Virus record (IMG/VR): IMGVR_UViG_3300011934_000017
Span: 62,001-126,000 of that record
Length of the DNA: 64,000 nucleotides
Direction: 5' to 3' (one strand)
Part shown: piece by piece, positions 3,937 to 21,907 of the stretch
Layout: each line of letters starts with the position of its first letter
How positions within the stretch are numbered: position 1 is the stretch's first letter
Notes under the pieces: model-generated
Database searches by the model: none
Told to the model about the DNA's origin: nothing
What the model saw: the letters and a program-made list of their open reading frames with translations, nothing else
Made by a program: the position numbers and the translations under genes

Positions 3937-3945
3937 GTTCTTACC

Positions 3946-5056: not shown

Positions 5057-6763
5057 TTATTCCGGAGCCACGGCTTTGAGACCTGTTACAATAACGCGAC
5101 AAGTTGCAGCTTGGGTGAACGTAACGCTCAAGCTATTATCGTCGGTGTATGTAATGCTTTCAGGAATGATAACTTCATCCGAAGAATCTACTACGGTTAC
5201 TTGGACGTACTTATTGCCCAAGTTGTGAGTAACAACGTGAGATACAGCAGCGGTTACTTGCTCCGAATAAACAAAGTAGCCATTTTCCATGCGAGTTGTC
5301 AGCGCTGTGATAGTATCATTTACGCCTGTAATCTGTGTGCCTAAATAACCTTTAGATACAGCAGCAACACCAGTGGAAGCGGACTGATCTTCACTATGAA
5401 GCAGAAGCTCACCCGTCATCGCTTCTGCGCCGTCACGTCCTAAGAATGTATTGCGAAGCTCTGCGCGGTCAACCAACACACCAGTTTCATCTACTGTGAT
5501 ACCGGATTGTGCAGGAGTCTGTACGCTCAGCTTGATACCATCACCGCCTTGCAAGCCGTTAGCAAGGGTTGTGGCATTCAGGTGCGTTTCGTTCAGACCA
5601 GAAGCTTTGGCACGCAAACCTGATTCAGAGTTTTCAAGTGTAGCATTGTCAGCTTTTACAGCAACTTTGGCATCAATGGAGGTGCTGGCGTTAACGCCAT
5701 CTTCAGTCAGGAAAATACCGCCGTTGAGGAGCGCATCAACACCTAACGCATCGTCGTTAGTAGAAGCAACACCAGGACCCATATCAATCTGAATGTTGTT
5801 GCCGTCTTTTTCAAGACCCGTTCCAGCAGTTACACCCGATAGACCACCAAAGTCAGCCCACATAGCGCCATTGTAGAACTGGAAAGATGAACGATTACGA
5901 TTCCAAACCAGAGCACCTACACCGACTTCACTTACATCATATGCAATAACGAACTGAGTACCGTCGTACTGTACAATATCTCCAGCACCAAGTTCTGCAA
6001 TGGTACCGAAGTTAGTGTGAAGAGCTACAGGCGTACCGATAATGTAACGGTCGCCCTCTGCAGGTGTTTCACCAGGGTCGAGAGTATCATCGGTCTGACG
6101 ATCAAGAACGTCAGCTTGGAAATCAAGACCCAGAACAGCAGTCTCAAGGTCTACTTGACGAACGGCATCTGTAGGACCTTCAGGAGAACCTAAACCTTGA
6201 ACGCGAAAACCACTCAAGTTTAGATTGCCGGTCATAGAATCGCCAGCTTTATCTACAGGCACATAACCCAGAGTAGCTTCTTTTCCATCAAGCTGAGTTT
6301 GTACGTTAGCTGTCACACCTGCCAGATGCTCTACTTCGGTAGACTTAGCAGAGGTAGTTGCTGCAATTTTACCAGTTCCGTCTGTAATAGCAATCATGTT
6401 GAATGCTAGATCGTCTACTAGAATAGATGTTGCCGCACCGGTAACGTTGTCTTGCTTTGTGTCGGCTACTGTACTCAGATAGCCTTTAGATACCGCAGTA
6501 GTTGGATCAGAAGACGATTGGTCAGAGCTATTAAGGGTAAGCTCCCCGACCATCGCGTTAGTACCATCCAGGGCCAAATAGTCACCGAGATTACCACCTT
6601 TCGCAATGTTCTGTACTTCGGAACCATCGAAGTATTTCAAAGAGCCGTCTGTAGTGTTAAACCACACACGACTTACAACAGGATCAAGAGGATCTGTAGC
6701 AAGTTGTTCTACTTTAAGGTCTTTGATAAGACCAGCTACACTTAGATTACCATTAACATGCAT
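5057..6763 (-). CDS. Tail fibre/virion appendage protein
   Basis: Fibre motifs (YLALDG..AMVG.L, VDKAGDSMTGNL, TAGTGLEKDGN), an internal duplication (DQS.S..AVSKGYL twice) and a C-terminal HNLG domain. Confidence 0.7.
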   Translation of the reverse strand: MHVNGNLSVAGLIKDLKVEQLATDPLDPVVSRVWFNTTDGSLKYFDGSEVQNIAKGGNLGDYLALDGTNAMVGELTLNSSDQSSSDPTTAVSKGYLSTVADTKQDNVTGAATSILVDDLAFNMIAITDGTGKIAATTSAKSTEVEHLAGVTANVQTQLDGKEATLGYVPVDKAGDSMTGNLNLSGFRVQGLGSPEGPTDAVRQVDLETAVLGLDFQADVLDRQTDDTLDPGETPAEGDRYIIGTPVALHTNFGTIAELGAGDIVQYDGTQFVIAYDVSEVGVGALVWNRNRSSFQFYNGAMWADFGGLSGVTAGTGLEKDGNNIQIDMGPGVASTNDDALGVDALLNGGIFLTEDGVNASTSIDAKVAVKADNATLENSESGLRAKASGLNETHLNATTLANGLQGGDGIKLSVQTPAQSGITVDETGVLVDRAELRNTFLGRDGAEAMTGELLLHSEDQSASTGVAAVSKGYLGTQITGVNDTITALTTRMENGYFVYSEQVTAAVSHVVTHNLGNKYVQVTVVDSSDEVIIPESITYTDDNSLSVTFTQAATCRVIVTGLKAVAPE

Positions 6764-9365: not shown

Positions 9366-10238
9366 TTATGATATAGGTAGCACTTTTGCACCTCCTGCAA
9401 CATCGATAGCAAATGTGACCTTAACGTTGTTTTCATCTTGAACGATAATGTCGGCAGGCCATACAATAGTGTTGCCTTCAAATACTTGCACAATAATATT
9501 GTAAGTATTCAAATTATGAGCAATGTTCCATTCAGAAGTCGGAGTCTCCTGAACGTATGCAAATCCCTTTGCAGCAGAATTGAGCAACGTTTCTTCCAAT
9601 GTTGTCATACCCGTCTGCACTGTATCTAGTCGTCCTTCAACAACCGTCGTTCTGTTTCGAACGCTCCGAATCTGGTTGTTTAGATTGCCAAAGAACATCT
9701 GAAGGGAGCTGGTAAGATAACGTAGAGGTCCGAGACTAAATTCGAGAAAAGAGCGAGGAAACGCCTCATCATCTGCATACTCTTCACCTGCTTCCAATGT
9801 GCGTGTCTTCAATGCCCCTGTTAGCTGACCGCCCGATAGAGGTAGGACTTCCATGTCTTCCGCTGTAGTAGAGTGTGGATTACCTATCAACGCGATATGA
9901 TCGTATAGTTCTTGATGTTCTGGCTCGGGCAAGTCCCAAACCTGATTAACATAGAAGTTGCTTTCCTCTAACACTTCTGACCAAGCGTGAAGATACGTAC
10001 CGGAATTGCTGCGGGAAGACCGACGAAGCACCTTTCCAAAATCCGCGCTATTAGGATCAGTCACTATCCACATAACGTTTAGCGGTGAGGTAACATCATG
10101 TGGTTCATTTTGTGATACAACGAAACGAACATTATTATAATTGGTATTCTGATTACTTAAAGCCACAATAACAGGTAACGAGGCAGAATGCCCGCGCGCT
10201 TCTGCCGCTGACAGAACACGTTCTTTGACATTAATCAT
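9366..10238 (-). CDS. Fibre-associated protein with coiled coil and C-terminal EWNIAHNL domain
   Basis: GNPHSTTA..LPLSGGQLTG fibre motif; SEWNIAHNLN domain. Confidence 0.65.
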   Translation of the reverse strand: MINVKERVLSAAEARGHSASLPVIVALSNQNTNYNNVRFVVSQNEPHDVTSPLNVMWIVTDPNSADFGKVLRRSSRSNSGTYLHAWSEVLEESNFYVNQVWDLPEPEHQELYDHIALIGNPHSTTAEDMEVLPLSGGQLTGALKTRTLEAGEEYADDEAFPRSFLEFSLGPLRYLTSSLQMFFGNLNNQIRSVRNRTTVVEGRLDTVQTGMTTLEETLLNSAAKGFAYVQETPTSEWNIAHNLNTYNIIVQVFEGNTIVWPADIIVQDENNVKVTFAIDVAGGAKVLPIS

Positions 10239-10719
10239 TTTTCTCTCCTGTTACTTTGAATTGGCTAGCTTTGTTGTCTATAATCTTTTTCATTACAGTG
10301 AGAAGATCGTCTTTTTTAACATCAACAGACAAAGGTTTGCCGTCTTTATAGGCAAGCGCTTTAAAAACTGTCTTAGGTTCAAAAGAAGCTACAGACAAGC
10401 ACTCCATTAGATAGAGTTGAGCCTCTTTGTCTGCAACAAAGTACACATCATTATGAAAAACACCAGCATCCAGTGGATTGACTGGAGTAGGACGTTCTTC
10501 ACTTACCTCTACAGGAACGCGAGTAAGTTGCTTATGTTCGAGGTCTACCTGAAAAGCAAAAGGTGTTCGAACAACAGCATTTCTCAAATCTTCAGTAATC
10601 TCAATGACAGGTTCGGGAATTTCAGAATGTCGCAAGCTGTTATAAAGTCCTTCTACTTTTCCTGTTGAAGGTTCGTAATGCGCATAGTGAACTGGTTTGT
10701 CTGTGCGTCTACGCTTCAT
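10231..10719 (-). CDS. Probable tail-fibre assembly chaperone
   Basis: YAHYEPSTGKVEGLY..H.EIP...IEIT pattern as in Tfa-like chaperones; lies downstream of a fibre gene. Confidence 0.45.
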   Translation of the reverse strand: MKRRRTDKPVHYAHYEPSTGKVEGLYNSLRHSEIPEPVIEITEDLRNAVVRTPFAFQVDLEHKQLTRVPVEVSEERPTPVNPLDAGVFHNDVYFVADKEAQLYLMECLSVASFEPKTVFKALAYKDGKPLSVDVKKDDLLTVMKKIIDNKASQFKVTGEKND

Positions 10720-10720
10720 A

Positions 10721-11527
10721 TTAATCTCCCAAAAGAATCCAATAAAAGTCCCAGCCCGAAGCCGTTACGTTTTGAGTACCGCCAGAACCGTCCGGCTCAA
10801 CATCAAGAAGATTGGTAACGACAGAAAGATTGGCTTTGCCTGTCTCTATAGACGTAACGCGCACTTTGTTCGCTACGTTGGAAGCAGGATTCACCCAAAA
10901 CAGAACTATAGAATGAGGATTAGACACGTCATTCAGCGCTTCAGGAAAAATAATCTCTTTAGTAAGTCCCGGAGTAGGATCAGTAAAACGTCCCCACTGT
11001 AATGAACGTCCAGAAGACACACTTTCCGAAGAAGCTGCATCAGTAGACACAAGAACAGGTGACTCACCATCATAACCTGAGGCACCTTCACCCCCAGCAG
11101 GCCCTTGCGGACCTGTTGCGCCTCTTTCACCTCTTTGCCCAGCGGGACCACGCGGGCCTGCGGGTCCCTGAGGACCCACATCACCTTTCGGACCAGCACA
11201 CCCTGGTACACCAGAACGACCATCGCGACCATTACGCCCACTGTTACCTGGAGCACCTCTAGGTCCTGTAGCGCCACGAGGACCCACACCAATATTGTGT
11301 ACTGTCATGAAGCCTGGGACTTGAACAATCGTTGAGTCGGCGCGATACAGATTTAGAACACCGATTTCCGGATCAAAATCGCCGCGCGTAACATAATTGT
11401 CCTCATCGCTACTATCTCCAGGTGTCTGTACTTCAATTTCACTTCCGTTGTAAACAACATCATCGTTTGGAGACGCATTGTTTCCAGGATCCAGCATGCC
11501 TAGCGGCACTCGTGTTAACTTACCCAT
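10721..11527 (-). CDS. Collagen-like fibre protein (paralog 6) with C-terminal QWG domain
   Basis: 25 contiguous Gly-X-Y triplets; shared N-domain GDFDPEIGVLNL...GF. Confidence 0.8.
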   Translation of the reverse strand: MGKLTRVPLGMLDPGNNASPNDDVVYNGSEIEVQTPGDSSDEDNYVTRGDFDPEIGVLNLYRADSTIVQVPGFMTVHNIGVGPRGATGPRGAPGNSGRNGRDGRSGVPGCAGPKGDVGPQGPAGPRGPAGQRGERGATGPQGPAGGEGASGYDGESPVLVSTDAASSESVSSGRSLQWGRFTDPTPGLTKEIIFPEALNDVSNPHSIVLFWVNPASNVANKVRVTSIETGKANLSVVTNLLDVEPDGSGGTQNVTASGWDFYWILLGD

Positions 11528-11537
11528 AATCTATCCT

Positions 11538-11714
11538 CTAGCGTACTGGAAGCCAAGATGTATTATCAGCGCTTCGTACTTTTGTATTTTCTGGAAACAT
11601 TTGAACCCACGAGCTATTGCCGTTTGTTCTTACTTTCCATCCCCAGTTAGAGAAATTTTGTACCCAGTTCGCGTCAGGATTTTCTCTAACACGTAATGTA
11701 ACAACAGTAGCCAT
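11538..11714 (-). CDS. 58-aa Trp-repeat protein missed by the ORF track
   Basis: Manual translation MATVVTLRVRENPDANWVQNFSNWGWKVRTNGNSSWVQMFPENTKVRSADNTSWLPVR*; AAGGAG RBS; fills the gap; resembles the N-terminus of 11726..15148. Confidence 0.75.
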   Translation of the reverse strand: MATVVTLRVRENPDANWVQNFSNWGWKVRTNGNSSWVQMFPENTKVRSADNTSWLPVR

Positions 11715-11725
11715 CTGTATACTCC

Positions 11726-14700
11726 TTAAGCAGGTCGAGTGACTTTTCTGTAGACGTAGAATCTATCATTTGTATTCGGATTTACGGCAACTCTCGGCCA
11801 GTTAAGCCAGTCGCTGAATGGACGTGTTGTTCCTTGATTTACCCAGCTTCCACTTTCTGCTATCCATGCTCTACCGCTGGATGCACTAAACACCCGCCCT
11901 GCTGTAAACGGCCAAACGACATTTTCGTAGGTAGATTCAGATTGACTGCGAGTGTAGAAACCAAAACGTTGGTCGCCTGAGAATCGAGTCGTTTCTGAAT
12001 AGTCATTTATATTGAAATTACGTGCAGTGAACGAACCTCCGTTAAACTTCTCAGTATCAACTGTAAACGCATCACCGTTTTTACGTACTCTTACTTTGGT
12101 TCTAGCGCCAGACCAACCGCCGGATACATCATCGCCTTCGCCACCCCAGCTCTCTAGCACAGTCACAGAGCTTCCTTCGAGATACAGAAGACCATAACCA
12201 GAAGAAGGTGCATTTCCTCCTTTGTTTCGTACAACAACAAGCTGATAAGGAACACCTCCTTGTACTTGAGCAGCTACCACCAAACCTATACTATCGTCAT
12301 CATTATTGCTAGAGGTTAAAACGGCCTCTAACTCATAATCAGCTACAGCATCAGGACTGATAATGCTGTTGGAGCTACCTGTATTTGTAGGCATTACAAA
12401 GCGATTGTTCGAAGTGTCGTAATACCAATCAGCAGCTTCACCTCCAGCAGAACTTGCCGAAGCATAGTAGTTATCACCATCTACACGCGGCCAAGTGTTA
12501 AACACGTCTTGTAGTGTAGGTGCAGGATTCGCAGCAATAAAGCTTTGGGCTTCTGTATCGGAGTTGAACATGTAAGCTTCAACTTCGGGCATAAAGACAG
12601 AATTTCCAGAACCCAGTGAAACAGTAGGTTCGAAATAAGCACCGCGCCAATCAGATGATGTGATACTGATAACTTCACCTGTATCAATATCGGTGATTTT
12701 CATAATCAGCCAGCTTGGAGTGTTGTGAGGAATGTTCTCACAAAGAACGTATAAGAAATGAACTCCTGGACTGATTGTTACATCTGTCGGCGTAAAATCA
12801 AGCATATCAAGGTCAGCGACGTGCAACCAAGGGCCACCATCTGGCATTACCATAACAGAAGCAAAATCGTCACACTCACCTTGTATACGAATATTACCGG
12901 ATTCTGTGTTGAACATACTTACAGCCATAAATGCTCTGTTACCTTGTACAATCGTATCGCTGGTCAAAGCTATTTGGTAACCATTAAAGCCGTTTGCGTC
13001 GGGTCCTGAAGTCTCTACCATTTTAGGCAGACCTTTAGAGAAGTTGGTAAAGCGTGTTCCTGAATTAGGATGTACAGTAGGACAGTGCGTTCTAAACTGC
13101 CACCAGCTTGCAGAATCATTTATGACTCTTACGTTTTGCAGCCCTGTAGTGGGAGTTATTAAAGCACCAGCACCAACAGCAGGCCAGCGATATACTTCAG
13201 CAACGGTGTCTTCTAAAACAGTACCATCACTTTCAATGCTGATTCTATTAGGTGCACCAGCCGGATACGCAACACTTGGAGCTATTGTGTAGTATTCTGT
13301 TAGAGAGAAGCTATCGTCAGGAGCTATTCCGTCAAATTCAATACGTGTAGCTGCCGCCGAAGTACCTTGATGCTCTTCACTGCAATCCCTTACGCCTTCT
13401 ACACAGTCCATTATATACGACCAATCTGAAACTTCACCTTCTGCTCCATCTACGCGCACTTCGATAAGATCACCAGAAGAAGGATCGTATTCGAACGTGA
13501 GAGAGCCGTTGCCTGACACAGAACCCGATGCTTGAAGTAAATCACCACCTTGAAATACTTGAACATTATCAGGAGAACTGAATGTGTTGAAGCGTATTTT
13601 ACCTTCACCTCCATCAGAACCAAGATCGTGATACATGATAGTAGAAGGTGCACCAACAGAATCTACGCGGCCAGCTTCATCCCCGCAAGTTTTAGGATCG
13701 CTTTCGCTACCACTGCCTATATACGGATCAGAACCACTACCGGATCCACCTCCGCTACTTCCGCCACTTCCACTTCCTCCATGCGGACACCACAAATGAT
13801 ATGTCCATGACTGCATGACTTCTGTAGAGGTGATACGTACAACGACGATAGTATCACCGTCAGCATTCGCAGGATCGTATGGAATTTCTAATAGCCCGTG
13901 ATGATAGCCGGATGCTGCGGTACCTGTTTCAGTAAATCCAGGAGAGGATGCAATTAAGCTGCCTCCATGAAACACTTCACACTTAGCAGCGACCCAAGGA
14001 AACAAATACAGAAGCTCAATCGTTCCAGGTGTAGGTCCCATATCGTGGAACATATCTTGAACCATCGTAGAGGTCGTAGTGACATACGGACCACCACTAT
14101 AAACGCCGCCACATGGATGTATTCTATCCCAAAAGTAGTCACCAGGACAGTAAAGCTTGTAGAGCCAAATAGAGTTCATTGAACCTTCTACTTCTACTCG
14201 AACTTTGCCGTCGCCTCCGTTTCTTCCAGGCCAGAAAAAGTATTCAACTTCACGAGGTGCGATTTCACCCGAGTCTCGTGCAGGAAGCTGAGTCGTAGTG
14301 TGTAACAGTTCGTCACCGTAATAGATTCTATAGCGTTGTGTACCTTCGGTAGACACCCAACGAATATGAACGTTACCTTCAACATCAGGCAAAGTATGAT
14401 AATAACTGCGTCTTTCGGTGTAAGTAGGGTCTTCCTCTAAATGCAAATGTTGATCTACTACAAGCTCGCTACAACCATAAGAATCAGAGTAGTTACCGGA
14501 GCCTGTGGGACTTGTAGAGCTTCCCCCGCCTGTAGTGCCCGGTGGATTTCCGGGACCACCCGATCCTACACTTCCTCCTGTACCGCCACTTCCCGATCCT
14601 CCTGTACCGCCACTTCCCGATCCTCCTGTACCGCCAGAACCTGATCCACCGCTGCCGCCTGTACCTGCACTGCCTCCGCTACCACTTCCACCACTTCCGC

Positions 14701-15148
14701 TTCCTGTGCCTCCATTGTAGTAGCCGTCGTTGTATCCAGAATTTCCAGGACCCCAAGGATATCCTCCAGATGCTCCGTTTCCTGGCCAAGGTGAGCCACC
14801 TCCAGCAGGGCCACCTGTTCCCCAATAACCAGAGTCCCCATCTTCTTCTGCCCAACCCGGCCACGGATCAGTCTCTCCTGGAATTGAGTCAGGTCCACCA
14901 AGATCAGGACCTGAGCCGTTTTCGCCTGTGCCGTCAGGTGTACCACCCATAGCGTCAGACCCACAAAGATCATCAGTAAGACAGTCAATGTTAATCCAAT
15001 AATTATTCGTACCGTGACGCGCTTTCATTCCATTGGAAGGTAACATGCGTCGCCATCCAGAATTTGCTGCATTCCTTACGTACCATTCTGACTGACAGAT
15101 ATCTAGCCAAAGTGAGTTTTCAGGATTTCTTATACGTAAACGACCCAT
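11726..15148 (-). CDS. Large adhesin-like fibre protein: Trp-repeat N-terminus, Gly/Ser linker, ~4 Cys-bounded beta repeats, lectin-like C-terminus
   Basis: 1140 aa; repeats of [YF]H.[LM]...G...VR[VI]...W.Y.[LM].C; C-terminal DDDSIG domain paralogous to 2739..3713. Confidence 0.7.
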   Translation of the reverse strand: MGRLRIRNPENSLWLDICQSEWYVRNAANSGWRRMLPSNGMKARHGTNNYWINIDCLTDDLCGSDAMGGTPDGTGENGSGPDLGGPDSIPGETDPWPGWAEEDGDSGYWGTGGPAGGGSPWPGNGASGGYPWGPGNSGYNDGYYNGGTGSGSGGSGSGGSAGTGGSGGSGSGGTGGSGSGGTGGSGSGGTGGSVGSGGPGNPPGTTGGGSSTSPTGSGNYSDSYGCSELVVDQHLHLEEDPTYTERRSYYHTLPDVEGNVHIRWVSTEGTQRYRIYYGDELLHTTTQLPARDSGEIAPREVEYFFWPGRNGGDGKVRVEVEGSMNSIWLYKLYCPGDYFWDRIHPCGGVYSGGPYVTTTSTMVQDMFHDMGPTPGTIELLYLFPWVAAKCEVFHGGSLIASSPGFTETGTAASGYHHGLLEIPYDPANADGDTIVVVRITSTEVMQSWTYHLWCPHGGSGSGGSSGGGSGSGSDPYIGSGSESDPKTCGDEAGRVDSVGAPSTIMYHDLGSDGGEGKIRFNTFSSPDNVQVFQGGDLLQASGSVSGNGSLTFEYDPSSGDLIEVRVDGAEGEVSDWSYIMDCVEGVRDCSEEHQGTSAAATRIEFDGIAPDDSFSLTEYYTIAPSVAYPAGAPNRISIESDGTVLEDTVAEVYRWPAVGAGALITPTTGLQNVRVINDSASWWQFRTHCPTVHPNSGTRFTNFSKGLPKMVETSGPDANGFNGYQIALTSDTIVQGNRAFMAVSMFNTESGNIRIQGECDDFASVMVMPDGGPWLHVADLDMLDFTPTDVTISPGVHFLYVLCENIPHNTPSWLIMKITDIDTGEVISITSSDWRGAYFEPTVSLGSGNSVFMPEVEAYMFNSDTEAQSFIAANPAPTLQDVFNTWPRVDGDNYYASASSAGGEAADWYYDTSNNRFVMPTNTGSSNSIISPDAVADYELEAVLTSSNNDDDSIGLVVAAQVQGGVPYQLVVVRNKGGNAPSSGYGLLYLEGSSVTVLESWGGEGDDVSGGWSGARTKVRVRKNGDAFTVDTEKFNGGSFTARNFNINDYSETTRFSGDQRFGFYTRSQSESTYENVVWPFTAGRVFSASSGRAWIAESGSWVNQGTTRPFSDWLNWPRVAVNPNTNDRFYVYRKVTRPA
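14573..14636. repeat. 24-bp tandem repeat (~2.7 copies) encoding a GSGSGGTG linker
   Basis: Unit TCCTCCTGTACCGCCACTTCCCGA read directly from the sequence. Confidence 0.85.
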
Positions 15149-15174
15149 GACACCTCCTAATAGGCATTAATAAA

Positions 15175-15678
15175 TCAAGGACGAATCCAAAGAGCGCCCG
15201 CACCTACAGCACCGGGATCAGCAGACTGAATGTAGATATCTACTTTACCGTCTTCACCTTTAGGGCCTGTAGCACCGGTCGCACCCATAGGCCCCATCTC
15301 GCCTTGAGCACCCATCTCACCTTGCGGACCAGTAGCACCCGGAGTTCCAGGAGGTCCTTCACAGCCCGGAGGCCCTTGTAAGCCGTCTTCACCTAGCAGT
15401 CCGTCAGTCCCGTCAACGCCACCTATACCTTGAGCGCCTGCAGGGCCGACACCTATATCACCCTGAGTCATGAAGCCGCGAATCTCTATACTCTGACCAT
15501 TCACTAACGTCAGCTTTAGAGTGCCTGTAACGTCGTTAAAGCTGCCACCAATAACGCCTGTGTTATTGATATCTTCATCTTCTTGGGTGCCGACTTCTTT
15601 ACCGTCGTATCGAACGTCAGAATTAGGACGACCACGAGCTTCAAGCATCGAAAGCGGTGTTCTAGTTAAGCCTCCCAT
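15175..15678 (-). CDS. Short collagen-like fibre protein (paralog 5)
   Basis: 23 Gly-X-Y triplets; ends QSADPGAVGAGALWIRP. Confidence 0.8.
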   Translation of the reverse strand: MGGLTRTPLSMLEARGRPNSDVRYDGKEVGTQEDEDINNTGVIGGSFNDVTGTLKLTLVNGQSIEIRGFMTQGDIGVGPAGAQGIGGVDGTDGLLGEDGLQGPPGCEGPPGTPGATGPQGEMGAQGEMGPMGATGATGPKGEDGKVDIYIQSADPGAVGAGALWIRP

Positions 15679-15851
15679 TACACATCCTCCAGTTTTCTTC
15701 GCATACGCTGTTGCTGTTCTTTTAAAACCTTTTCAATATCGGAAGAGGTCAACTTTGATTTTTTACACGACAAACAAGCACCAAACAATTCAACGCTTAT
15801 TGCTTGAGAAGAGTCGTAAGGCCATATTGCTTTGCATTTTGGACATTTCAT
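15678..15851 (-). CDS. 57-aa CxxC...CxxC zinc-finger protein missed by the ORF track
   Basis: Manual translation MKCPKCKAIWPYDSSQAISVELFGACLSCKKSKLTSSDIEKVLKEQQQRMRRKLEDV*; TAATG stop/start overlap with the next gene. Confidence 0.7.
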   Translation of the reverse strand: MKCPKCKAIWPYDSSQAISVELFGACLSCKKSKLTSSDIEKVLKEQQQRMRRKLEDV

Positions 15852-15863
15852 GTTTTGTTCTCT

Positions 15864-16526
15864 CTAAGGCCAAGGTGTTCCACCGCTTGAGCTGGAAGAA
15901 TACATAGAAGGAGGATTAGCATTGGGATTTATCCATAAGCCACCTCCGCCGATAGAGCCGGGGTCTGAAGTAGATACGACAATGTTTATTGTACCGTCTT
16001 CACCTGGCGGTCCTGGTGGCCCCATATTTCCAGGTTCACCTTGAGGACCAGTAGGGCCAATAGGTCCAATCTCACCAGTAGGACCCATTCTTCCTACAGG
16101 GCCTTTAGCGCCTTTTGTGCCTCGAACTCCGGGAGGGCCTTGCATACCTCTACGTCCTGATCTTCCCTTAGGTCCTTGAGGTCCACGCTCACCTTGAGGT
16201 CCTGCACATCCTTGTTCTCCGGGCAGACCATTTTTTCCGGGTTTACCCGGCTTACCATCTTTTCCTCGCGGTCCTTCGGGGCCAGTAGGTCCTTTTGGGA
16301 TAGTGTCTGCTCTGTGAAAGCCAGAAATGCGAATCCTTTCGCCGTTCTTCATGTGTAAAATTAGACTACCTGTAACAGCATCTAGGTGCCCGTAATCAAT
16401 CTCTGAAATAAGCGCTTCTTTAGGTTGATCAAAATTCAATCTTTCTTGCTGCGCCACTATATCTGTATCAGGTTCTTGTTTTCGAGCACTGATCTGATTT
16501 AATATTGGCTTTGTTAGTCCTGCCAT
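15864..16526 (-). CDS. Collagen-like fibre protein (paralog 4), strongly basic helix
   Basis: ~34 Gly-X-Y triplets; STSDPGSIGGGGLWI motif. Confidence 0.8.
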   Translation of the reverse strand: MAGLTKPILNQISARKQEPDTDIVAQQERLNFDQPKEALISEIDYGHLDAVTGSLILHMKNGERIRISGFHRADTIPKGPTGPEGPRGKDGKPGKPGKNGLPGEQGCAGPQGERGPQGPKGRSGRRGMQGPPGVRGTKGAKGPVGRMGPTGEIGPIGPTGPQGEPGNMGPPGPPGEDGTINIVVSTSDPGSIGGGGLWINPNANPPSMYSSSSSGGTPWP

Positions 16527-16555
16527 ATCAAGTCTCCTTGTTTAAACATACGTAT

Positions 16556-19300
16556 CTATTTTACCAACGTTAGTGTTGCAGGAGTAGTTGATGAACCACC
16601 GTCTATAAATAAAGTATTATTCCATTTCCAGCGAGGATCGCTCATATCAAGTAGCATCTCCGCATATCCTGAAGAGTCAGCGGTAACGCTTTGATAGAGT
16701 GCACCTGCCGGAACATCGAAGTGCAGTTTCATGGTCAAAGTGGCACCTGAACTCCAAATTCTTATTTTTGTGAGGGGGTCAGTACAGCATCCTATCGGTA
16801 TTGTGTAAATCATTCCGTTCGTGCTAGAATCGTATTGCGCAGTTGACCACATACTATGCATCATATCCGAACCTGCAATGATGAATCCATTACAGTTGAA
16901 TGCAATGCCAGATGCTGGACTACCGCTACTTGGATCCGCACAGTGCTCCGGCGGTGGTTCTGGAGGAGGTGGCGGCGGTGGTTCTGGAGGAGGTGGCGGC
17001 GGTGGTTCTGGAGGAGGTGGCGGACTCAATGAGGTATCTTCAATGGAAATATCCGAACTCGTAGCCAACGCGCTAGTACCAGAACACTCATGTAACTTGA
17101 CCTTAAATTTCTCCGTACCTTCGGTTAAGGCATCGTTACGAATACCTATGATAAAACTGCCACTATCTCCAGAAACACTAACACTTCCATTCATGCTATT
17201 TGTAAAGTCATTAGAGTTTATGCTGCCTGATACTGACATTATTGTCCAACAAAGCGTGCCAGAACCGTAATTAGTTGTAGTCACGGACATAATAACTGAC
17301 CCACCTTCACTAACGCTTGTAATGTGCGGCACAATACTGAAGGTAGGCGGAGGCGGAGGTGGAGGTGGAGGTGCCGGGGTTAAAGATGTATCGTTAATAG
17401 AAATAGCCGAGGTTGTGGCGAGAGCACTGGTATTAGAGCACTCGTGCAACTTAACCTTAAACTTTTCTGTACCTTCTGTTAGACTGTCACTTTTAATACC
17501 GATGCCGAATGAAGCGCTGTCGTTAGAAACGTAAATGCTTCCACTCATGGAACTTGTAAAATCGTCAGAGTTTAAGCTACCGCTTACAGGAAGAATCGTC
17601 CAACATAATGTTCCTGATCCAAAGTCAGTAGTATCGACGGACATAATAACTGACCCACCTTCATTCACACTGGTGATGTTAGGTGTTATGGAGTACGTAG
17701 CAGGAGTAGTCGAGGTATCTACAATGGAAATGTCTGAACTCATTGCCAAAGTAGCTGTGCTTCCAGAGCATTCGTGTAGCTTGACTTTGAACTTCTCTAA
17801 CCCTTCTGTTAGGCTGTCCTCTCTTATTCCTATGTTAAAACTTCCACTGTCGTTAGATACGCTGACACTTCCACTCATAGAACCGGTGAAATCATTAGAG
17901 TCTACACTGCCACTAACTGGCATTAGCGTCCAGCATAAAGTGCCCGATCCATAATGCGCGGTAGTCACTGTCATTGTGACTGTGCCGCCTTCATTTATGC
18001 TGGTAGTATTCGGCGCTATAGCATACGTAGGAGGTGTTAACGAGGTGTCGCCAATAGTTACTTCGGAACTCATAGCTAAAGAGGCTGTGCTTCCTGAGCA
18101 CTGGTGAAGTTTCACTTTAAACTTCTCGGTACCTTCAGTGGAATTGTCTTCTCTTATTCCTATGTCAAAAGAGCCGCTGTCATTAGAAATGAACACGCTG
18201 CCACTTATAGGTCCTGTAAAGTCGTCGGAGTTTATGTCACCGTCGGCCGGAAGTATTGTCCAGCACAAAGTACCTGTACCGTAATCAGTGGTATCAACGG
18301 TCATTGTGACAGACTGACCTTCATTCACGTTGTTAACGTTTGGTGTTATTGAGTATGTAGGAGGACTGCGAGAGGTGTCATTTATAGTGATCGCAGCACT
18401 GGTGTCCAAAACAGACCCACTATTCGAACAAGGGTGCAATCGAACTTTAAATTTTTCCGTTCCTTCCGTAAACGTATCCTCACGCACAGCTATATCGAAG
18501 CTACCACTGTTGTCTATAATAGACACGCTGCCTGTCATAGCTGAGTTGAAGTCGTCTTCATCTATATCACCCGAATCTGGCACAATAGTCCAACACAATG
18601 TACCTGAGCCAAACATTGTAGTGGTAACTGTCATAGTCACTATATTGCCTTCATCTACGTTCGTAGAATCGGGTTCAATGCTGTAACTAGGTGGAGTAGG
18701 GTCAACCCACAACACTCCGGGACCTACTGCTCCAGGGTCTGTAGCAGAGACTACAATACTAGGCAGCACTTCTTCGCCTTGTTCTCCGGGAACTCCTACG
18801 CCGCCATCTACACCTCGCGGACCTGTAGGGCCGATTGGCCCTATGTCACCTTCAGATCCCGCAGCTCCTCTTGGTCCTTGAGGTCCTGTAGCACCTCTAA
18901 TTCCGGCAGGACCTCGCATACCTTTTCTTCCATCAAGTCCTGTCTTTCCTCTTGCACCTGTGTCGCCTCGTGTTCCTTCACATCCAGGTTCTCCTACAAG
19001 ACCATCTCTTCCCGGAACGCCTTGCTTACCTGGTGCACCATCATCTCCTTTAGGGCCTGTAAGTCCCATAGGAATTTCATCTTCTACGGGAAAGCCTTCA
19101 ACTTCAATGCGCTCTCCGTTATACAGTTGGAGAACGAGCGACCCTTTCAGTTCATCATAAAAGCCGTACTCAACTTCAGAAACAGTGGATTCTCTAGGAA
19201 TATCTAAAGAGAGTTTTTCATCGCTAACAATGATTTCTGTTTCTTTTTCTGAACCCTTTGCTTTTACTTGTTCTATAACAGGTCTGGTTAATCCTGTCAT
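16556..19300 (-). CDS. Collagen-like fibre (paralog 3) with 5 Calx-beta/Ig-like repeats, poly-Pro and a Cys-rich tip (start adjusted to MTGLTRP at 19300)
   Basis: 33 Gly-X-Y triplets; five ~110-aa repeats [YF]xIxP..T.V.EG...LCWT...D..TEG.EKFKV.LH.CS; AGGAGA RBS before 19300. Confidence 0.8.
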   Translation of the reverse strand: MTGLTRPVIEQVKAKGSEKETEIIVSDEKLSLDIPRESTVSEVEYGFYDELKGSLVLQLYNGERIEVEGFPVEDEIPMGLTGPKGDDGAPGKQGVPGRDGLVGEPGCEGTRGDTGARGKTGLDGRKGMRGPAGIRGATGPQGPRGAAGSEGDIGPIGPTGPRGVDGGVGVPGEQGEEVLPSIVVSATDPGAVGPGVLWVDPTPPSYSIEPDSTNVDEGNIVTMTVTTTMFGSGTLCWTIVPDSGDIDEDDFNSAMTGSVSIIDNSGSFDIAVREDTFTEGTEKFKVRLHPCSNSGSVLDTSAAITINDTSRSPPTYSITPNVNNVNEGQSVTMTVDTTDYGTGTLCWTILPADGDINSDDFTGPISGSVFISNDSGSFDIGIREDNSTEGTEKFKVKLHQCSGSTASLAMSSEVTIGDTSLTPPTYAIAPNTTSINEGGTVTMTVTTAHYGSGTLCWTLMPVSGSVDSNDFTGSMSGSVSVSNDSGSFNIGIREDSLTEGLEKFKVKLHECSGSTATLAMSSDISIVDTSTTPATYSITPNITSVNEGGSVIMSVDTTDFGSGTLCWTILPVSGSLNSDDFTSSMSGSIYVSNDSASFGIGIKSDSLTEGTEKFKVKLHECSNTSALATTSAISINDTSLTPAPPPPPPPPPTFSIVPHITSVSEGGSVIMSVTTTNYGSGTLCWTIMSVSGSINSNDFTNSMNGSVSVSGDSGSFIIGIRNDALTEGTEKFKVKLHECSGTSALATSSDISIEDTSLSPPPPPEPPPPPPPEPPPPPPPEPPPEHCADPSSGSPASGIAFNCNGFIIAGSDMMHSMWSTAQYDSSTNGMIYTIPIGCCTDPLTKIRIWSSGATLTMKLHFDVPAGALYQSVTADSSGYAEMLLDMSDPRWKWNNTLFIDGGSSTTPATLTLVK
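16950..17021. repeat. 24-bp tandem repeat x3 encoding PPPPPEPP
   Basis: Unit GGCGGTGGTTCTGGAGGAGGTGGC. Confidence 0.85.
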
Positions 19301-19330
19301 ATCGTATCTCCTTAACAAGCATAGAAGCGC

Positions 19331-21127
19331 CTATTTCACTAGCGTCAATGTAGCAGGTGTAGTTGATGAACCTCCATCAATAAACAAAGTATTATTCCAT
19401 TTCCACCCTGGGTTACTCATATCTATAGGCATTTCTAAAAAGCCAGTAGAAGGATCCGCAGTCATACTCATATAAAGAGAACCCGGAGGAACATCAAAGT
19501 ATATTTTCAACGTTAATGTCGCACCTGAACTCCAAAGACGGATAGCCGTAAGAGGATCGTCGCAACACCCGATAGGTATTGTGTAGATCATTCCGTTCGT
19601 GCTAGAGTCGTACTGTGCTGTTGACCACATAGAGTGTTGCATATCCGAACCTGCAATGATGAATCCATTACAGTTGAATGCTATACCTGAGGCTGGACTA
19701 CCACTACTCGGATCCAAACAATGCGCCGGAGGAGGCGGTGGAGGTGGTGGACTCGGAGGTGGTGGTTCTGGTGCCGGAGGAGGTGGTGGTTCTGGTGCCG
19801 GAGGAGGTGGTGGAGGTGGTGGTGGAGGTGGTGGAGGTGGAGGTGGTGGTGGTGGCGCGGGACTCAAAGACGTGTCGCCAATCGTTATAACAGAACTCAT
19901 AGCGAGCGTCGCACTGCTTCCTGTACACCTGTGAAGCTTAACTTTAAATTTCTCCGTTCCTTCTGTACTACTGTCGTTACGAATACCTATGTTAAAACTG
20001 CCGCTATCGTTAGATATATCCACACTTCCACTCATAGACCCTGTGAAGTCGTTAGAGCTTATTGAGCCTGCTACGGAAAGAATCGTCCAACAAAGGGTAC
20101 CCGATCCATAATCTGTCGTGTTTACAGTCATGGTAACGGAAGAACCTTCATTCACACTTGTACTACTTGGAGAAATCGAATAAGTAGCAGGACTTCGGGA
20201 GGTATCATTGATCGTTATTGCTGAGCTTGTAGCTAAAACAGAACCACTATCAGAACAAGGATGCAGTCGCACTTTAAATCTTTCAGTGCCTTCTGTTAAG
20301 CTATCATCCCGAATAGGTATATTAAAAGAACCGCTATTATCTGTTATCGATACACTACCTGTCATAGATGAATTAAAATCGTCTTCGTTTATAGTGCCAG
20401 AGTCTTGCACAATAGTCCAACACAACGATCCTGATCCGAACATCGTTGTAGTGACCGTCATCGCGACAGACGATCCTTCATCCACGTTAGTAGAGTCTGG
20501 TTCAATATCATAGCTAGGAGGTGTAGGATCGACCCACAGAACTCCAGGACCAACAGCACCAGGATCGGTAGCAGAGACTACAATACTGGGAGACGCTTCT
20601 TCACCGGTCTCACCCGCAGGGCCCATTTCACCATCTTCGCCTCTAGGTCCTGTTGGCCCAATCGGTCCTATATCACCCTTCGGGCCTGTAATGCCTCGGG
20701 GCCCTTGAATGCCTGTTCTGCCTCGGATTCCAGGTTCTCCTTCTACACCTTCTCTTCCGTCAGGTCCAATTTCTCCTTGCGAGCCTGTATCACCTCGCAT
20801 TCCTTCACAGCCCGGCTCACCTGTTAAACCGTCTCTACCTAGTAGACCGGGTTGTCCGTCTTTTCCATCACCTCCTTTAGGGCCTGTGACACCTGCAGGT
20901 ACTTTAGAAGCCGTAGGAAAACCCTTTACCTCAATACGCTCTCCATTATATAGCTGTAGAACAAGTGCGCCTTTTAACGGGTCAAAGAATCCGTACTCAA
21001 CTTCAGAAACAGTAGACTCTCTAGGAATATCTAAAGATAGCTTGTCTTCTTGTACGACAATCTCCGTCTCTTTTTCCGACCCTTTCGCATGTACTTGTTC
21101 TATAACAGGTCTGGTTAATCCTGCCAT
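19331..21127 (-). CDS. Collagen-like fibre (paralog 2) with 2 Calx-beta/Ig-like repeats, long poly-Pro and a Cys-rich tip; near duplicate of 16556..19300
   Basis: 33 Gly-X-Y triplets; same N- and C-terminal domains as paralog 3; start set to MAGLTRP by homology. Confidence 0.8.
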   Translation of the reverse strand: MAGLTRPVIEQVHAKGSEKETEIVVQEDKLSLDIPRESTVSEVEYGFFDPLKGALVLQLYNGERIEVKGFPTASKVPAGVTGPKGGDGKDGQPGLLGRDGLTGEPGCEGMRGDTGSQGEIGPDGREGVEGEPGIRGRTGIQGPRGITGPKGDIGPIGPTGPRGEDGEMGPAGETGEEASPSIVVSATDPGAVGPGVLWVDPTPPSYDIEPDSTNVDEGSSVAMTVTTTMFGSGSLCWTIVQDSGTINEDDFNSSMTGSVSITDNSGSFNIPIRDDSLTEGTERFKVRLHPCSDSGSVLATSSAITINDTSRSPATYSISPSSTSVNEGSSVTMTVNTTDYGSGTLCWTILSVAGSISSNDFTGSMSGSVDISNDSGSFNIGIRNDSSTEGTEKFKVKLHRCTGSSATLAMSSVITIGDTSLSPAPPPPPPPPPPPPPPPPPPPAPEPPPPPAPEPPPPSPPPPPPPPAHCLDPSSGSPASGIAFNCNGFIIAGSDMQHSMWSTAQYDSSTNGMIYTIPIGCCDDPLTAIRLWSSGATLTLKIYFDVPPGSLYMSMTADPSTGFLEMPIDMSNPGWKWNNTLFIDGGSSTTPATLTLVK

Positions 21128-21148
21128 ATTAAACTCCACAAAGTCTGT

Positions 21149-21907
21149 TCAAACTTGTTCTGGCTTACCCCAGATTACTGCATTTCCTCCGGGATTAGAT
21201 TCAGATATGATTACGGTAGATTCTATTGTTGCGCCAGCAGGACCGGCAGGACCGTCTTCGCCTCCAATACACTCAGGTCCAGGCTGACCTCGAGCACCTT
21301 CATGCCCGTATCTTCCTTTTTCACCTACAGGGCCTTGAATACCCACATCACCTTCTGGTCCCATAGGTCCTTTACGTCCTTGTATACCGTCTTCGCCAGG
21401 ATCACCCTGCTCGCCAGGAAGTCCAAGCGGACCAGGAGGTCCTTCACAACCTACTGCACCGTCTGGACCATCGTCGCCGGTGTCACCATCGTCGCCGTCG
21501 TTACCTCTTTCACCTCTAGGTCCTGTAGGGCCTCTGCCGAAGTCACTCTGTATCAGAAAGTCTTTTATTTGAACTACTTCGCCATTTCTTCGGACAAGAT
21601 TAAGCGTACCATCTTTAGACTCGAATGCGGCTTCTACAAGCAATCCGTCGTTTTTTACTTCCCGTGTATTAAAATCAACGGTATCGGTATTGACGTTACG
21701 CTTTGCGGCTTTTGATTCTCTATCGTCCCCAAAAACATCAAACTGTTCCATGTGCAACGATGTTAAAGGGGAACCAGAAGAGTGAGGAAGCAGCTTTTTA
21801 TCTACCTGAGAAGCCGTATTAGTCAGAATGTTCTTTCCTACTGGAACACTATGATCATTCCCTTCATATAGGTTAGATAGCAGCTTACTTTCTTTAATGC
21901 CTTTCAT
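21149..21907 (-). CDS. Collagen-like fibre protein (paralog 1), acidic helix
   Basis: 29 triplets, a CIG interruption, then 4 more; ends SESNPGGNAVIWGKP. Confidence 0.8.
   Translation of the reverse strand: MKGIKESKLLSNLYEGNDHSVPVGKNILTNTASQVDKKLLPHSSGSPLTSLHMEQFDVFGDDRESKAAKRNVNTDTVDFNTREVKNDGLLVEAAFESKDGTLNLVRRNGEVVQIKDFLIQSDFGRGPTGPRGERGNDGDDGDTGDDGPDGAVGCEGPPGPLGLPGEQGDPGEDGIQGRKGPMGPEGDVGIQGPVGEKGRYGHEGARGQPGPECIGGEDGPAGPAGATIESTVIISESNPGGNAVIWGKPEQV

What the first reader, a model, noticed from the sequence alone, without database searches (positions are those of the whole stretch)
11538..15678. Split fibre motif: collagen C-termini and Trp-repeat N-termini as plug-and-socket adaptors
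Seen: 15175..15678 stops right after DPGAVGAGALWIRP, and the next gene starts MGRLRIRNPENSLW. In 5057..6763 the equivalent motif is continuous (TDPLDPVVSRVWFNTTDGSLKYFDG). The 1140-aa adhesin N-terminus has three [IVA]R-x(5-6)-W units, and the unannotated 58-aa ORF 11538..11714 consists only of three such units. Inference: one triple-repeat chain caps a trimeric collagen end, completing the motif once per chain. This would attach a monomeric adhesin, with the 58-aa protein serving as a blank cap.
Basis: inference. Interest (0 to 1): 0.62.

Follow-up and report, generated by a model that had tools for sequence, protein, structure and literature searches.

The report
Two-piece phage fibre with Trp-hairpin joint
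A jumbo phage splits one of its fibres into a short collagen-like stalk and a large sugar-binding tip, and probably joins them through a conserved tryptophan-hairpin end and a three-hairpin domain; the same pair of parts recurs in many unrelated phages and has not been described before.

Summary
The window is part of a complete 220-kb jumbo phage related to PaBG, NCTB, Lu11 and Erwinia phage Y3.

**Stalk.** The 167-aa collagen protein stops right after a Trp hairpin (..ALWIRP).

**Tip protein and small ORF.** The next gene, 1140 aa, starts with a 56-aa domain of three [IVA]R-x6-W hairpin units. The 58-aa ORF is a free paralogue of that domain. It is a real gene:
- dN/dS is 0.07-0.11.
- It has its own ribosome-binding site.
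- It is annotated in PaBG as PaBG_00249.

**Conservation of the pairing.** [quoted passage not shown] holds in more than 15 loci. Two of these have pectate-lyase-like spikes instead of collagen. One metagenomic protein, P0115, fuses stalk, hairpin, triple-Trp domain and an adhesin module in one chain.

**Binding test.** A 3:1 complex prediction gave weak support: ipSAE 0.58, against a best control of 0.02.

**Verdict.** A non-covalent joint is likely, about 0.7. Two claims stay open:
- The 3:1 stoichiometry is unproven, because the fusion implies that three triple-Trp domains per trimer are possible.
- The "blank cap" role of the 58-aa protein was never tested.

The "split motif" idea is only partly right, because the stalk hairpin is complete on its own. 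I rate this a new variant of a known kind (fibre joints).

The parts
15175..15678 (-). Short collagen-like stalk protein, 167 aa. It has an N-terminal virion-attachment-type domain (residues 1-75, shared in type with the other collagen fibre genes), GXY repeats (about residues 76-145) and a C-terminal Trp hairpin.
   Evidence: ORF. Pfam Collagen, E 3.2e-13. Orthologues of 163-173 aa in every relative examined.
15178..15243 (-). C-terminal 'socket' hairpin of the stalk, residues 146-167 (VDIYIQSADPGAVGAGALWIRP). The stop codon follows directly.
   Evidence: I148, I150, D154, P155, G161, A162, W164 and P167 are invariant in 8 orthologues. Across lineages the protein ends 0-5 residues after the Trp. 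It is one of only two collagen ORFs in the genome that end this way.
11726..15148 (-). Large distal fibre protein (putative adhesin), 1140 aa. It consists of the triple-Trp domain, a Gly/Ser-rich tether, several Cys-bracketed beta-sandwich modules and a lectin-like C-terminus.
   Evidence: ORF and sequence. AGGAGG lies 5 nt before the ATG. PHROG tail-fibre and virion-protein matches over residues 864-1131. Homologues of 750-1590 aa share the N-terminal domain.
14975..15148 (-). Triple-Trp 'plug' domain of the adhesin, residues 1-58: three hairpin units of about 19 aa, with two conserved Cys (C18, C56).
   Evidence: Units found. Alignments A1, A5 and A6. Profile hit at E 2.7e-30. Complex prediction with the stalk end gave 0.58 against controls of 0.02 or less.
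14453..14974 (-). Low-complexity Gly/Ser/Pro-rich tether, about residues 59-232, between the plug and the globular modules.
   Evidence: Read directly from the translation.
11729..13051 (-). C-terminal two-domain glycan-binding-like module, residues 700-1140: a CBM-like beta-sandwich plus a concanavalin A-like jelly roll.
   Evidence: AlphaFold2 single-chain model, mean pLDDT 83.7. Foldseek matches to an alginate lyase with a CBM, legume lectins, CBM66 and a mycobacteriophage central fibre, E 1e-7 to 1e-4, probability 1.0. The Atlas search gave a lead to the 3-keto-disaccharide hydrolase / ConA-like group.
11538..11714 (-). 58-aa free triple-Trp protein, a paralogue of the adhesin's plug domain without the two Cys.
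   Evidence: AAGGAG lies 7 nt upstream. dN/dS is 0.07-0.11 against relatives. 83% and 74% identical homologues in metagenomes; 55% identical to PaBG_00249. Matches phrog_29040. AlphaFold2 mean pLDDT 81.7. The gene order adhesin, small ORF, collagen gene is conserved.
10721..11527 (-). 268-aa collagen fibre protein with its own globular C-terminal domain. It is the constant downstream neighbour of the small ORF in the PaBG-like and Y3-like phages.
21149..21907 (-). 252-aa collagen protein that also ends just after a Trp hairpin (..NAVIWGKPEQV). It is a possible second socket in this genome.
   Evidence: Genome-wide scans. The orthologue in L014 ends the same way. The PaBG orthologue gp245 has a C-terminal domain instead.
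15864..16526 (-). 220-aa collagen protein: the same hairpin (..GGGLWINP) followed by a 19-aa tail ending TPWP.
   Evidence: The (T/P)WP end is conserved in PaBG gp246, L014, L023, JA29, Y3 and L038.

Best explanation
The 167-aa collagen protein and the 1140-aa protein are the proximal and distal halves of one fibre of a 'hairy' jumbo myovirus.

- The stalk trimerises through its collagen repeats. It is held on the virion by the N-terminal domain type that all the collagen fibre genes share.
- At its free distal end it presents three copies of a Trp hairpin (strand, DP loop, G-A-L-W-I-R-P, then the C-terminus). This is the 'socket'.
- The distal protein has no such virion-attachment domain. Instead it begins with a 56-aa domain of three similar hairpin units (h-R-h-R-N-x-x-N-x-x-W). 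This is the 'plug'.
- The plug binds the socket non-covalently. A flexible Gly/Ser tether then carries beta-sandwich and lectin-like modules that bind a host surface glycan.
- I favour one plug chain per stalk trimer, with the three units acting as a pseudo-threefold copy of the trimeric hairpin layer.
- The 58-aa protein is a free plug that occupies the same kind of socket. It may act as a cap or competitor on stalks without an adhesin, or as an aid to stalk trimerisation.

Shown: gene structure, conservation, homology of the two plug copies, purifying selection, the natural fusion, and the lectin-like fold.
Inferred: the physical contact (weak support from prediction only), the stoichiometry, and every role given to the 58-aa protein.
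For: - **Both termini are fixed in position.** Stalk orthologues in at least 10 lineages stop 0-5 residues after the hairpin Trp. The next gene starts 2-4 residues before unit 1.
- **The pairing recurs without collagen.** It is found behind pectate-lyase-like spikes in L041 and L087.
- **There is a Rosetta-stone fusion.** P0115, seen on two contigs from two samples, is made of a stalk-type N-terminal domain (E 6e-11 to the 167-aa protein, against 4e-4 or worse for the other paralogues), collagen, the hairpin, a 10-aa linker, the triple-Trp domain and an adhesin-type module.
- **Complex prediction.** Three copies of stalk residues 117-167 with adhesin residues 1-62 gave a median ipSAE of 0.58 (runs 0.67, 0.58, 0.47). 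The best of 3 controls was 0.02. The runs agree in at least 89% of contacts and the partner's pLDDT is at least 74. The tool's verdict is 'weak support': the mark was reached by 58 of 80 solved complexes and 2 of 110 mismatched pairs, but at a score of 0.60 or under by only 7 of those 80 solved complexes and by both mismatches that passed. These counts hold only roughly here, because my own alignments and a 3+1 chain set-up were used.
- **The domain sits at the extreme N-terminus** in 75 of 111 representative proteins, where phage fibre proteins usually attach.
- **It behaves as a separate small domain.** P0074 has it between Pro/Thr-rich linkers, and the window's adhesin follows it with a low-complexity tether of about 170 aa.
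- **There are always exactly three units.** In the esterase-type proteins the units are nearly identical to each other, as pseudo-symmetry would require.
- **Every genome examined has exactly two significant copies**, one on a large protein and one small or free.
- **The small ORF is under purifying selection**.
- **The adhesin's C-terminus folds as a single chain** into a CBM plus ConA-like lectin fold.
Against: - The complex score falls in the band that the tool itself calls more often wrong than right unless the guess was likely beforehand. No interface was reported.
- Only the 3:1 arrangement was tested. The small protein was never tested against any partner.
- The P0115 fusion puts one plug on each of three chains, so a trimer can carry three plugs.
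- In L038 and three related representatives the plug lies behind a 255-aa N-terminal extension. In SGNH-esterase proteins and in P0075 it is internal with no socket hairpin in front. A free N-terminus and a socket are therefore not universal requirements.
- The AlphaFold2 model of the domain alone is only moderately confident (pTM 0.46), leaves unit 1 unstructured, and matches no known fold.
- There is no virion proteomics for these proteins: the PaBG MALDI study identified 14 bands, none of them gp247-250. No RNA data exist for this phage.
Confidence: 0.4

Rival explanations
1. The same joint, but not 3:1. The triple-Trp domain is a homotrimerising neck, or a domain that binds one per chain. 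The adhesin then attaches as three chains per stalk (3:3), giving a three-armed tip, and the 58-aa protein forms a trimeric end-cap.
For: The natural fusion P0115 has only a 10-aa linker between the hairpin and unit 1, so it must place three plugs at one trimer end. The domain is also found after SGNH-esterase and between Calx-like domains in proteins of the kind that are often trimeric spikes. The stalk hairpin has the same strand-loop-Trp-strand pattern as a unit, so layers of three hairpins could stack coaxially (reading).
Against: The unit number is fixed at three in all clear family members. A few weak multi-stretch hits (such as P0060 and P0095) were not resolved. Open-ended shaft repeats usually vary in number. 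Near-identity of the three units in the esterase-type proteins suggests equivalent roles for all three. The long Gly/Ser tether and the single-chain lectin-like domains do not look like an intertwined trimer. The 3:1 model scored well above its controls.
Confidence: 0.3
2. There is no direct contact. The triple-Trp domain is a small Trp-rich glycan- or cell-surface-binding module, or a generic spacer, that belongs to the adhesin. The neighbouring stalk is an independent bare 'hair', and the adjacency only reflects a shared fibre operon.
For: The domain occurs internally and C-terminally in enzymes and lectin-containing proteins with no socket in front (P0071, P0074, P0075, P0100, HRDY3, L089). 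Trp-rich beta-hairpin repeats are typical of sugar- or choline-binding modules, and the only (non-significant) fold neighbours were choline-binding repeats. Contact is supported only weakly.
Against: This does not explain why the upstream gene stops right after the Trp hairpin in every lineage, including unrelated pectate-lyase-like spikes. It does not explain the stalk-adhesin fusion, or how an adhesin without any attachment domain would reach the virion. No Pfam CBM or cell-wall-binding family matches.
Confidence: 0.2
3. The 58-aa protein is not a virion part. It is an assembly factor, comparable in gene position to tail-fibre assembly chaperones. It transiently occupies or templates the stalk end, or shields the adhesin's plug, during assembly.
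For: It lies directly downstream of the large fibre gene, as tfa / gp38-type chaperones do. It mimics the adhesin's plug. PaBG, Lu11 and JA29 have only one socket-ended protein for two plug proteins. Collagen helices generally need a C-terminal nucleation site (established knowledge).
Against: It has no similarity to any chaperone family in Pfam or PHROGs. In Lu11 and HRDY3 the small copy lies far from the fibre genes, and in HRDY3 it is fused to a 340-aa domain annotated as a virion structural protein.
Confidence: 0.1

Closest known systems
Phage T4 long tail fibre joints (gp34 trimer, gp35 monomer, gp36 and gp37 trimers)
   Same: A fibre built from separately encoded proximal and distal proteins that are joined end to end without covalent bonds. 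One joint passes from a trimer to a single chain (established knowledge of T4).
   Different: No sequence or fold relation was found. The stalk here is a collagen triple helix, and the proposed single-chain element is a 56-aa three-hairpin domain at the start of the distal protein, not a separate hinge protein. Stoichiometry here is unproven.
N-terminal anchor or docking domains of branched tailspike systems (CBA120 TSP1-4, G7C gp63.1/gp66, RaK2 / phiKp24 fibres; see PMC10253068 and PMC9700779, listed)
   Same: Receptor-binding proteins carry a small N-terminal module whose only job is to hang them on another fibre or spike protein. The module is shared between proteins with different distal domains.
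   Different: Those anchors are trimer-on-trimer and belong to other families (T4 gp10-like domains). The module here has no Pfam family, is a triple internal repeat, and pairs with a defined C-terminal Trp hairpin.
phrog_29040 (phage protein family of unknown function)
   Same: The 58-aa protein matches it over residues 12-52 (E 6.6e-4).
   Different: The family has no assigned function, so the match names the protein but explains nothing.
Collagen-like phage tail fibre proteins (PF01391-bearing; phrog_8745, 5073, 366, 6320)
   Same: The stalk and five paralogues in the window have GXY repeats followed by a ..DP..G..LW..P hairpin, as these families do.
   Different: The 167-aa member has lost everything after the hairpin, and the next gene supplies the distal part.
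Concanavalin A-like lectin / CBM folds (legume lectins, CBM66, PL7 alginate lyases)
   Same: The adhesin's residues 700-1140 are predicted to adopt a beta-sandwich plus ConA-like jelly roll.
   Different: The likeness is at fold level only, at 9-14% identity. No catalytic or sugar-binding residues were checked.

Membership tests
Collagen triple helix repeat (PF01391) | A run of Gly-X-Y triplets that scores above the Pfam gathering threshold. | tested here: met
   167-aa protein: 49.7 bits against a cut-off of 27.2, E 3.2e-13. The 268-, 220- and 920-aa paralogues also pass.
phrog_29040 (small phage protein, unknown function) | A profile match over most of the 68-position model. | tested here: met
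   E 6.6e-4, 21 bits, residues 12-52 on profile positions 12-55. The match is borderline but is backed by clear orthologues.
Triple-Trp plug domain (defined here; no public family) | Three consecutive units of about 19 aa with the pattern h-[RK]-h-R-x6-W, matching the A6 profile. | tested here: met
   Adhesin N-terminus E 2.7e-30 and small ORF E 9.6e-26 in the own genome. 100 representative proteins at E 1e-3 or better in 1.84 billion.
Socket/plug pairing (defined here) | The gene directly upstream of an N-terminal triple-Trp protein ends within 5 residues after a ..[DE]P..W[IV]x hairpin. | tested here: met
   Met in the window, PaBG-type loci, NCTB/L024, L014, L023 (with a 525-nt insert between the genes), Sen-NF, JA29, Y3, Lu11, HRDY3, L039, L042, L088, L041 and L087. 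In L038 the stalk also ends this way but the plug is internal. For L043 the upstream gene was cut off, so it could not be judged.
Socket/plug pairing (defined here) | Physical binding of the plug to the socket. | tested here: inconclusive
   Prediction only: ipSAE 0.58 against controls of 0.02 or less, and the tool's verdict is 'weak support'. No experiment is available.
Tail fibre assembly chaperones (Tfa, T4 gp38 / gp57-type) | Sequence membership in a known chaperone family. | tested here: not met
   The 58-aa protein has no Pfam hit at E 0.1 or better, and its only PHROG hit at E 0.01 or better is phrog_29040. Only the gene position resembles these chaperones.
Choline-binding / cell-wall-binding beta-hairpin repeats (CW_binding_1) | A Pfam match, or a significant fold match to C-LytA-type solenoids. 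| tested here: not met
   No Pfam match. Foldseek E is 7 or more and TM 0.3 or less. VIA-align gave no chain with Z of 2 or more.
Concanavalin A-like lectin/glucanase fold (adhesin C-terminus) | A jelly-roll fold superposable on lectins, CBMs or PL7 lyases. | tested here: met
   Model pLDDT 83.7. 196 PDB matches at E 1e-3 or better, led by alginate lyase with CBM, legume lectins and CBM66. No Pfam family matches.
Single gene joined by readthrough or frameshift (stalk + adhesin) | An open path from the stalk frame into the adhesin frame. | tested here: not met
   TGA is followed 6 codons later by an in-frame TAG. The adhesin ATG is in another frame and has its own Shine-Dalgarno site. The spacer varies from an overlap to 525 nt among relatives.

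The most novel reading that the evidence does not exclude
A single polypeptide with three hairpin repeats acts as a pseudo-trimeric template. It both nucleates and caps a collagen-like (or beta-helical) trimer end. This would give phages a universal trimer-to-monomer connector. The free 58-aa version would set how many stalks carry an adhesin, or would start stalk folding. The same socket/plug pair is exchanged between jumbo myoviruses and small podovirus-like phages as a portable way to swap receptor-binding proteins.
Probability: 0.25. Interest if true: 0.8.

Novelty: new variant of a known kind. Interest (0 to 1): 0.6.

Why it matters
- **Open question in this phage group.** These phages belong to the 'hairy Myoviridae' (Lu11, Y3, JA phages, PaBG). 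PMC6143709 states that the proteins forming the hairs are unknown. A defined stalk-plus-tip architecture with a recognisable joint gives concrete candidates and a testable assembly rule.
- **Annotation.** The joint has no Pfam family. Its N-terminal half was even cut off by the public gene call of this genome (P0019 starts at Met35). Its gene neighbourhood is nevertheless conserved from 220-310-kb jumbo phages to contigs of 35-45 kb. If binding is confirmed, it would let annotators predict which protein hangs on which fibre.
- **Structure.** It would add a trimer-to-single-chain solution to the known repertoire of fibre joints.
- **Laboratory use.** It would offer a small module for attaching chosen receptor-binding domains to a fibre in laboratory phages.

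Tried and rejected
- **Readthrough or frameshift joining the stalk and adhesin: rejected.** There is a second in-frame stop, a different frame, a separate ribosome-binding site, and a variable spacer in relatives.
- **The 58-aa ORF as a duplication scar or pseudogene: rejected.** dN/dS is 0.07-0.11, it is conserved out to Lu11, and it has its own ribosome-binding site.
- **One socket per plug protein: rejected as a general rule.** The own genome has two bare-ended collagen proteins and two plug proteins. PaBG, Lu11 and JA29 have only one such end.
- **Fold and sequence searches with the 58-aa model: nothing usable.** Foldseek E was 6.5 or more, VIA-align gave no Z of 2 or more, and the PDB profile search gave only chance-level hits.
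- **A PDB sequence search with the adhesin returned only low-complexity noise**.
- **Megablast of the region against GenBank phages: no match**.
- **The search for related loci with the mixed alignment A1 failed** because it had no conserved stretch. It was repeated with sub-alignments.
- **Expression could not be tested.** Only two DNA metagenome runs (stromatolite) hold the sequence and no RNA run does.
- **The PaBG virion proteome (14 MALDI bands) does not cover gp247-250**. The Y3 paper is not held.
- **Promoter and terminator scans of 10500-16600 gave fewer sites than shuffled sequence**.
- **Complex prediction.** Only the 3:1 stalk/adhesin job could be run, because the cap is one job. 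The result was 'weak support'. The 3:3 arrangement and the 58-aa protein were not tested.

Full report
**Where the window comes from**

The window is G000:C1:62001-126000 of a complete 220,237-bp virus record with direct terminal repeats. The sequence is held in two stromatolite metagenome runs. It has no near-identical GenBank phage. Its proteins tie it to the jumbo phages PaBG (Baikalvirus), NCTB, the Erwinia Y3-like phages, the Dickeya JA phages and Lu11. PMC6143709 groups these as 'hairy Myoviridae' and says that the proteins forming the hairs are unknown.

All genes discussed here are on the minus strand and lie in one fibre cluster:
- collagen genes of 252, 602, 920 and 220 aa;
- a 57-aa CxxC ORF;
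- the 167-aa collagen gene;
- the 1140-aa gene;
- the 58-aa ORF;
- a 268-aa collagen gene.

Promoter-like and terminator-like sites in 10500-16600 are no more frequent than in shuffled sequence. This fits one transcription unit.

**The observation**

Every sequence fact in the finding is correct.
- The 167-aa protein (15175..15678) is a collagen-repeat protein (PF01391, E 3.2e-13). It ends ..SADPGAVGAGALWIRP, followed by TGA.
- The 1140-aa ORF starts 26 nt further on, in a different frame, behind AGGAGG. A second in-frame stop follows the TGA, so the two are separate polypeptides.
- Its first 51 residues hold three [IVA]R-x6-W units.
- The 58-aa ORF (11538..11714) holds three more and has an AAGGAG site.
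- Three clustered units occur in no other real ORF of the window. A profile of the domain finds exactly these two places in the genome.
- The two copies are homologous (about 31% identity, conserved W17, W36 and W54).

**The small ORF is a real gene**

- Orthologues exist at 83% and 74% identity in metagenomes and at 55% in PaBG, where it is annotated as PaBG_00249.
- More distant copies are found in NCTB, Sen-NF, JA29, Y3, Lu11 and HRDY3.
- Where synonymous sites are not saturated, dN/dS is 0.07-0.11.
- It matches phrog_29040, a family of unknown function.
- In a search of 1.84 billion representatives, about 14 clusters of free 55-82-aa proteins form their own subfamily.

**The pairing is conserved far beyond this phage**

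In every relative a collagen protein of 163-173 aa stops 0-5 residues after the hairpin Trp. The observed endings are ALWVKP, AFWVRP, ALWIKP, ALWIKPV/R, AIWVRP, ALWIRV, AIWVKA, AIWVKQ and SIWVRTSS. The next fibre gene begins M-x-R-h-R.. with the triple-Trp domain.

This holds in:
- PaBG and five PaBG-like IMG/VR lineages;
- NCTB and L024;
- L014, L023 and L039;
- Sen-NF, JA29 and Y3;
- Lu11 and HRDY3.

Two further collagen cases, L042 and L088, end ..GIWINPKA and ..GIWINPNA.

The same pairing also appears with no collagen at all. In L041 a 735-aa pectate-lyase-like spike ends ..SASEPASPYPGMAWVQP. In L087 a 478-aa one ends ..TAEPTVGIQPGDIWVQP. In both, an overlapping gene follows that starts with three near-perfect hRNAxNTGW units.

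In whole-genome scans such an ending is rare. It occurs in one fibre protein each in PaBG, Lu11 and JA29, and in two in the own genome.

**A Rosetta-stone fusion**

P0115 (647 aa) was seen on two contigs from two samples. It is a single chain made of:
- a stalk-type N-terminal domain (E 6e-11 to the 167-aa protein, against 4e-4 or worse for the other five collagen paralogues);
- collagen repeats;
- the hairpin ..YTDPGAVGAGVMWVNP;
- a 10-aa linker;
- the triple-Trp domain;
- a module similar to adhesin residues 503-582.

Gene fusion of two neighbours is classical evidence that they work together.

**Direct test of binding**

I ran one complex prediction: three copies of stalk residues 117-167 with adhesin residues 1-62, using my own 8-row alignments.
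- The median ipSAE was 0.58 (runs 0.67, 0.58, 0.47).
- The best of three controls was 0.02.
- The runs agree in at least 89% of contacts, and the partner's pLDDT is at least 74.
- The tool's verdict is 'weak support'. The mark was reached by 58 of 80 solved complexes and 2 of 110 mismatched pairs. At a score of 0.60 or under, only 7 of those 80 solved complexes reached it, as did both mismatches that passed.
- These counts hold only roughly for this 3+1 job.

The prior from comparative genomics is high, so I take this as modest positive evidence. No interface was reported.

**What the domain is**

- It has no Pfam family, no relative among PDB sequences and no fold match.
- The AlphaFold2 model of the small protein (pLDDT 81.7, pTM 0.46) shows hairpins for units 2 and 3 and leaves unit 1 unstructured.
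- Of 111 family members, 75 carry the domain at the extreme N-terminus, 19 are small and free (some are contig-end fragments), 16 carry it internally and 1 at the C-terminus.
- The adhesin-type copies have two conserved Cys (C18, C56) that the free copies lack.
- In P0074 the domain is flanked by Pro/Thr-rich linkers on both sides. In the window's adhesin a Gly/Ser-rich tether of about 170 aa follows it. This is the behaviour of a small independent anchoring domain.
- The unit number is three in all clear members. In the esterase-type proteins the three units are nearly identical to each other. That fits a closed pseudo-threefold domain better than an open stack of shaft repeats.

**The distal protein**

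Residues 700-1140 fold as a single chain with pLDDT 83.7. Foldseek matches include an alginate lyase with a CBM, legume lectins, CBM66 and a mycobacteriophage central fibre (E 1e-7 to 1e-4). The Atlas search gave the same lead. The label 'adhesin' is therefore reasonable, though a PL7-like lyase activity cannot be excluded. The public gene call (P0019) starts at Met35 and so removes most of the plug.

1. 'Split motif'. The stalk hairpin is a complete strand-loop-strand. In the 920-aa and 602-aa paralogues the chain continues after ..LWVDP with Calx-like domains, not with a Trp unit. The continuous stretch in the 568-aa protein resembles 'hairpin plus one unit' only in pattern.
2. Stoichiometry. 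The fusion carries one plug per chain, so three plugs per trimer are possible. I could not test 3:3.
3. 'Blank cap'. Binding of the small protein was not tested.
   - PaBG, Lu11 and JA29 have two plug proteins for one socket-ended protein. This fits competition or capping.
   - In Lu11 and HRDY3 the second copy lies far from the fibre genes. In HRDY3 and L089 it ends a protein of about 400 aa.
   - In the own genome the 252-aa collagen protein offers a second bare end.
4. Exceptions. In L038-type phages the plug follows a 255-aa N-terminal extension. In SGNH-esterase fusions no socket precedes it.

**Conclusion**

I put the probability that the stalk end and the triple-Trp domain form a physical joint at about 0.7. 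Of this, about 0.4 goes to the 3:1 pseudo-trimer version and 0.3 to other stoichiometries. About 0.2 goes to 'no contact, the domain is a glycan-binding or spacer module'. The role of the 58-aa protein (cap, competitor or assembly aid) is inference only.

The kind of system, a non-covalent fibre joint or anchor domain, is known from T4 and from branched tailspike phages. This particular socket/plug pair, its triple-repeat design and its wide distribution are not described in the libraries or papers I could search.

The standard bacterial code was used throughout.

Noticed in passing
window 15678-15851 (-): A 57-aa ORF with two CxxC pairs (zinc-ribbon-like) sits between the 220-aa and 167-aa collagen genes. 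Its stop overlaps the start of the 167-aa gene. PaBG has no gene at this position, and L013 and L023 have other, unrelated inserts there. The spot looks like an insertion hot-spot.
   Followed up: partly
window 15047-15148 (-): The public gene call for the 1140-aa protein (P0019, 1106 aa) starts at Met35. It therefore cuts off unit 1 and most of unit 2 of the triple-Trp domain. The longer start has a strong AGGAGG site and is conserved in all homologues.
   Followed up: yes
window 21149-21907 (-): A 252-aa collagen protein also ends just after a Trp hairpin (..NAVIWGKPEQV), but a triple-Trp gene does not follow it. Its PaBG orthologue gp245 carries a C-terminal domain of about 200 aa instead.
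   Followed up: partly
window 15864-16526 (-): The 220-aa collagen family ends with a short flexible tail and a conserved (T/P)WP at the C-terminus in the window, PaBG, L014, L023, JA29, Y3 and L038. It has a hairpin plus an extra terminal Trp, and its role is unknown.
   Followed up: no
window 16556-19318 and 19331-21139 (-): Two paralogous collagen fibre proteins (920 aa and 602 aa) have 5 and 2 copies of a Calx-beta/Ig-like module, long poly-Pro tracts, and the same C-terminal domain of about 130 aa. This is copy-number variation of a repeat module between neighbouring genes.
   Followed up: no
L002 (NCTB), L024, L038: Several fibre proteins of relatives, including the NCTB and L038 adhesins, end in Hint/intein-like modules (..VVHN.. 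at the C-terminus). The window's proteins do not.
   Followed up: no
P0071, P0077, P0100, P0111; L029 (HRDY3) 2948-4153; L089 1870-3138: The triple-Trp domain is also found after SGNH-esterase-like domains and at the C-terminus of proteins of about 400 aa. The N-terminal part of the HRDY3 protein resembles a central region of the PaBG adhesin gp248.
   Followed up: partly
window 11726-15148 (-), residues about 233-700: The adhesin holds at least three repeated beta-sandwich modules of about 110 aa, each closed by Cys residues (..C..CP..). PaBG gp248 and P0115 have the same module type.
   Followed up: no
window 4411-5010, 5057-6763, 9366-10238 (-): Three further structural proteins share a C-terminal domain of about 65 aa (phrog_21918, 24148 and 16122 cross-matches). 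The 568-aa one is the orthologue of PaBG gp257, which was detected in virions by MALDI (PMC7412058, Table 1).
   Followed up: no
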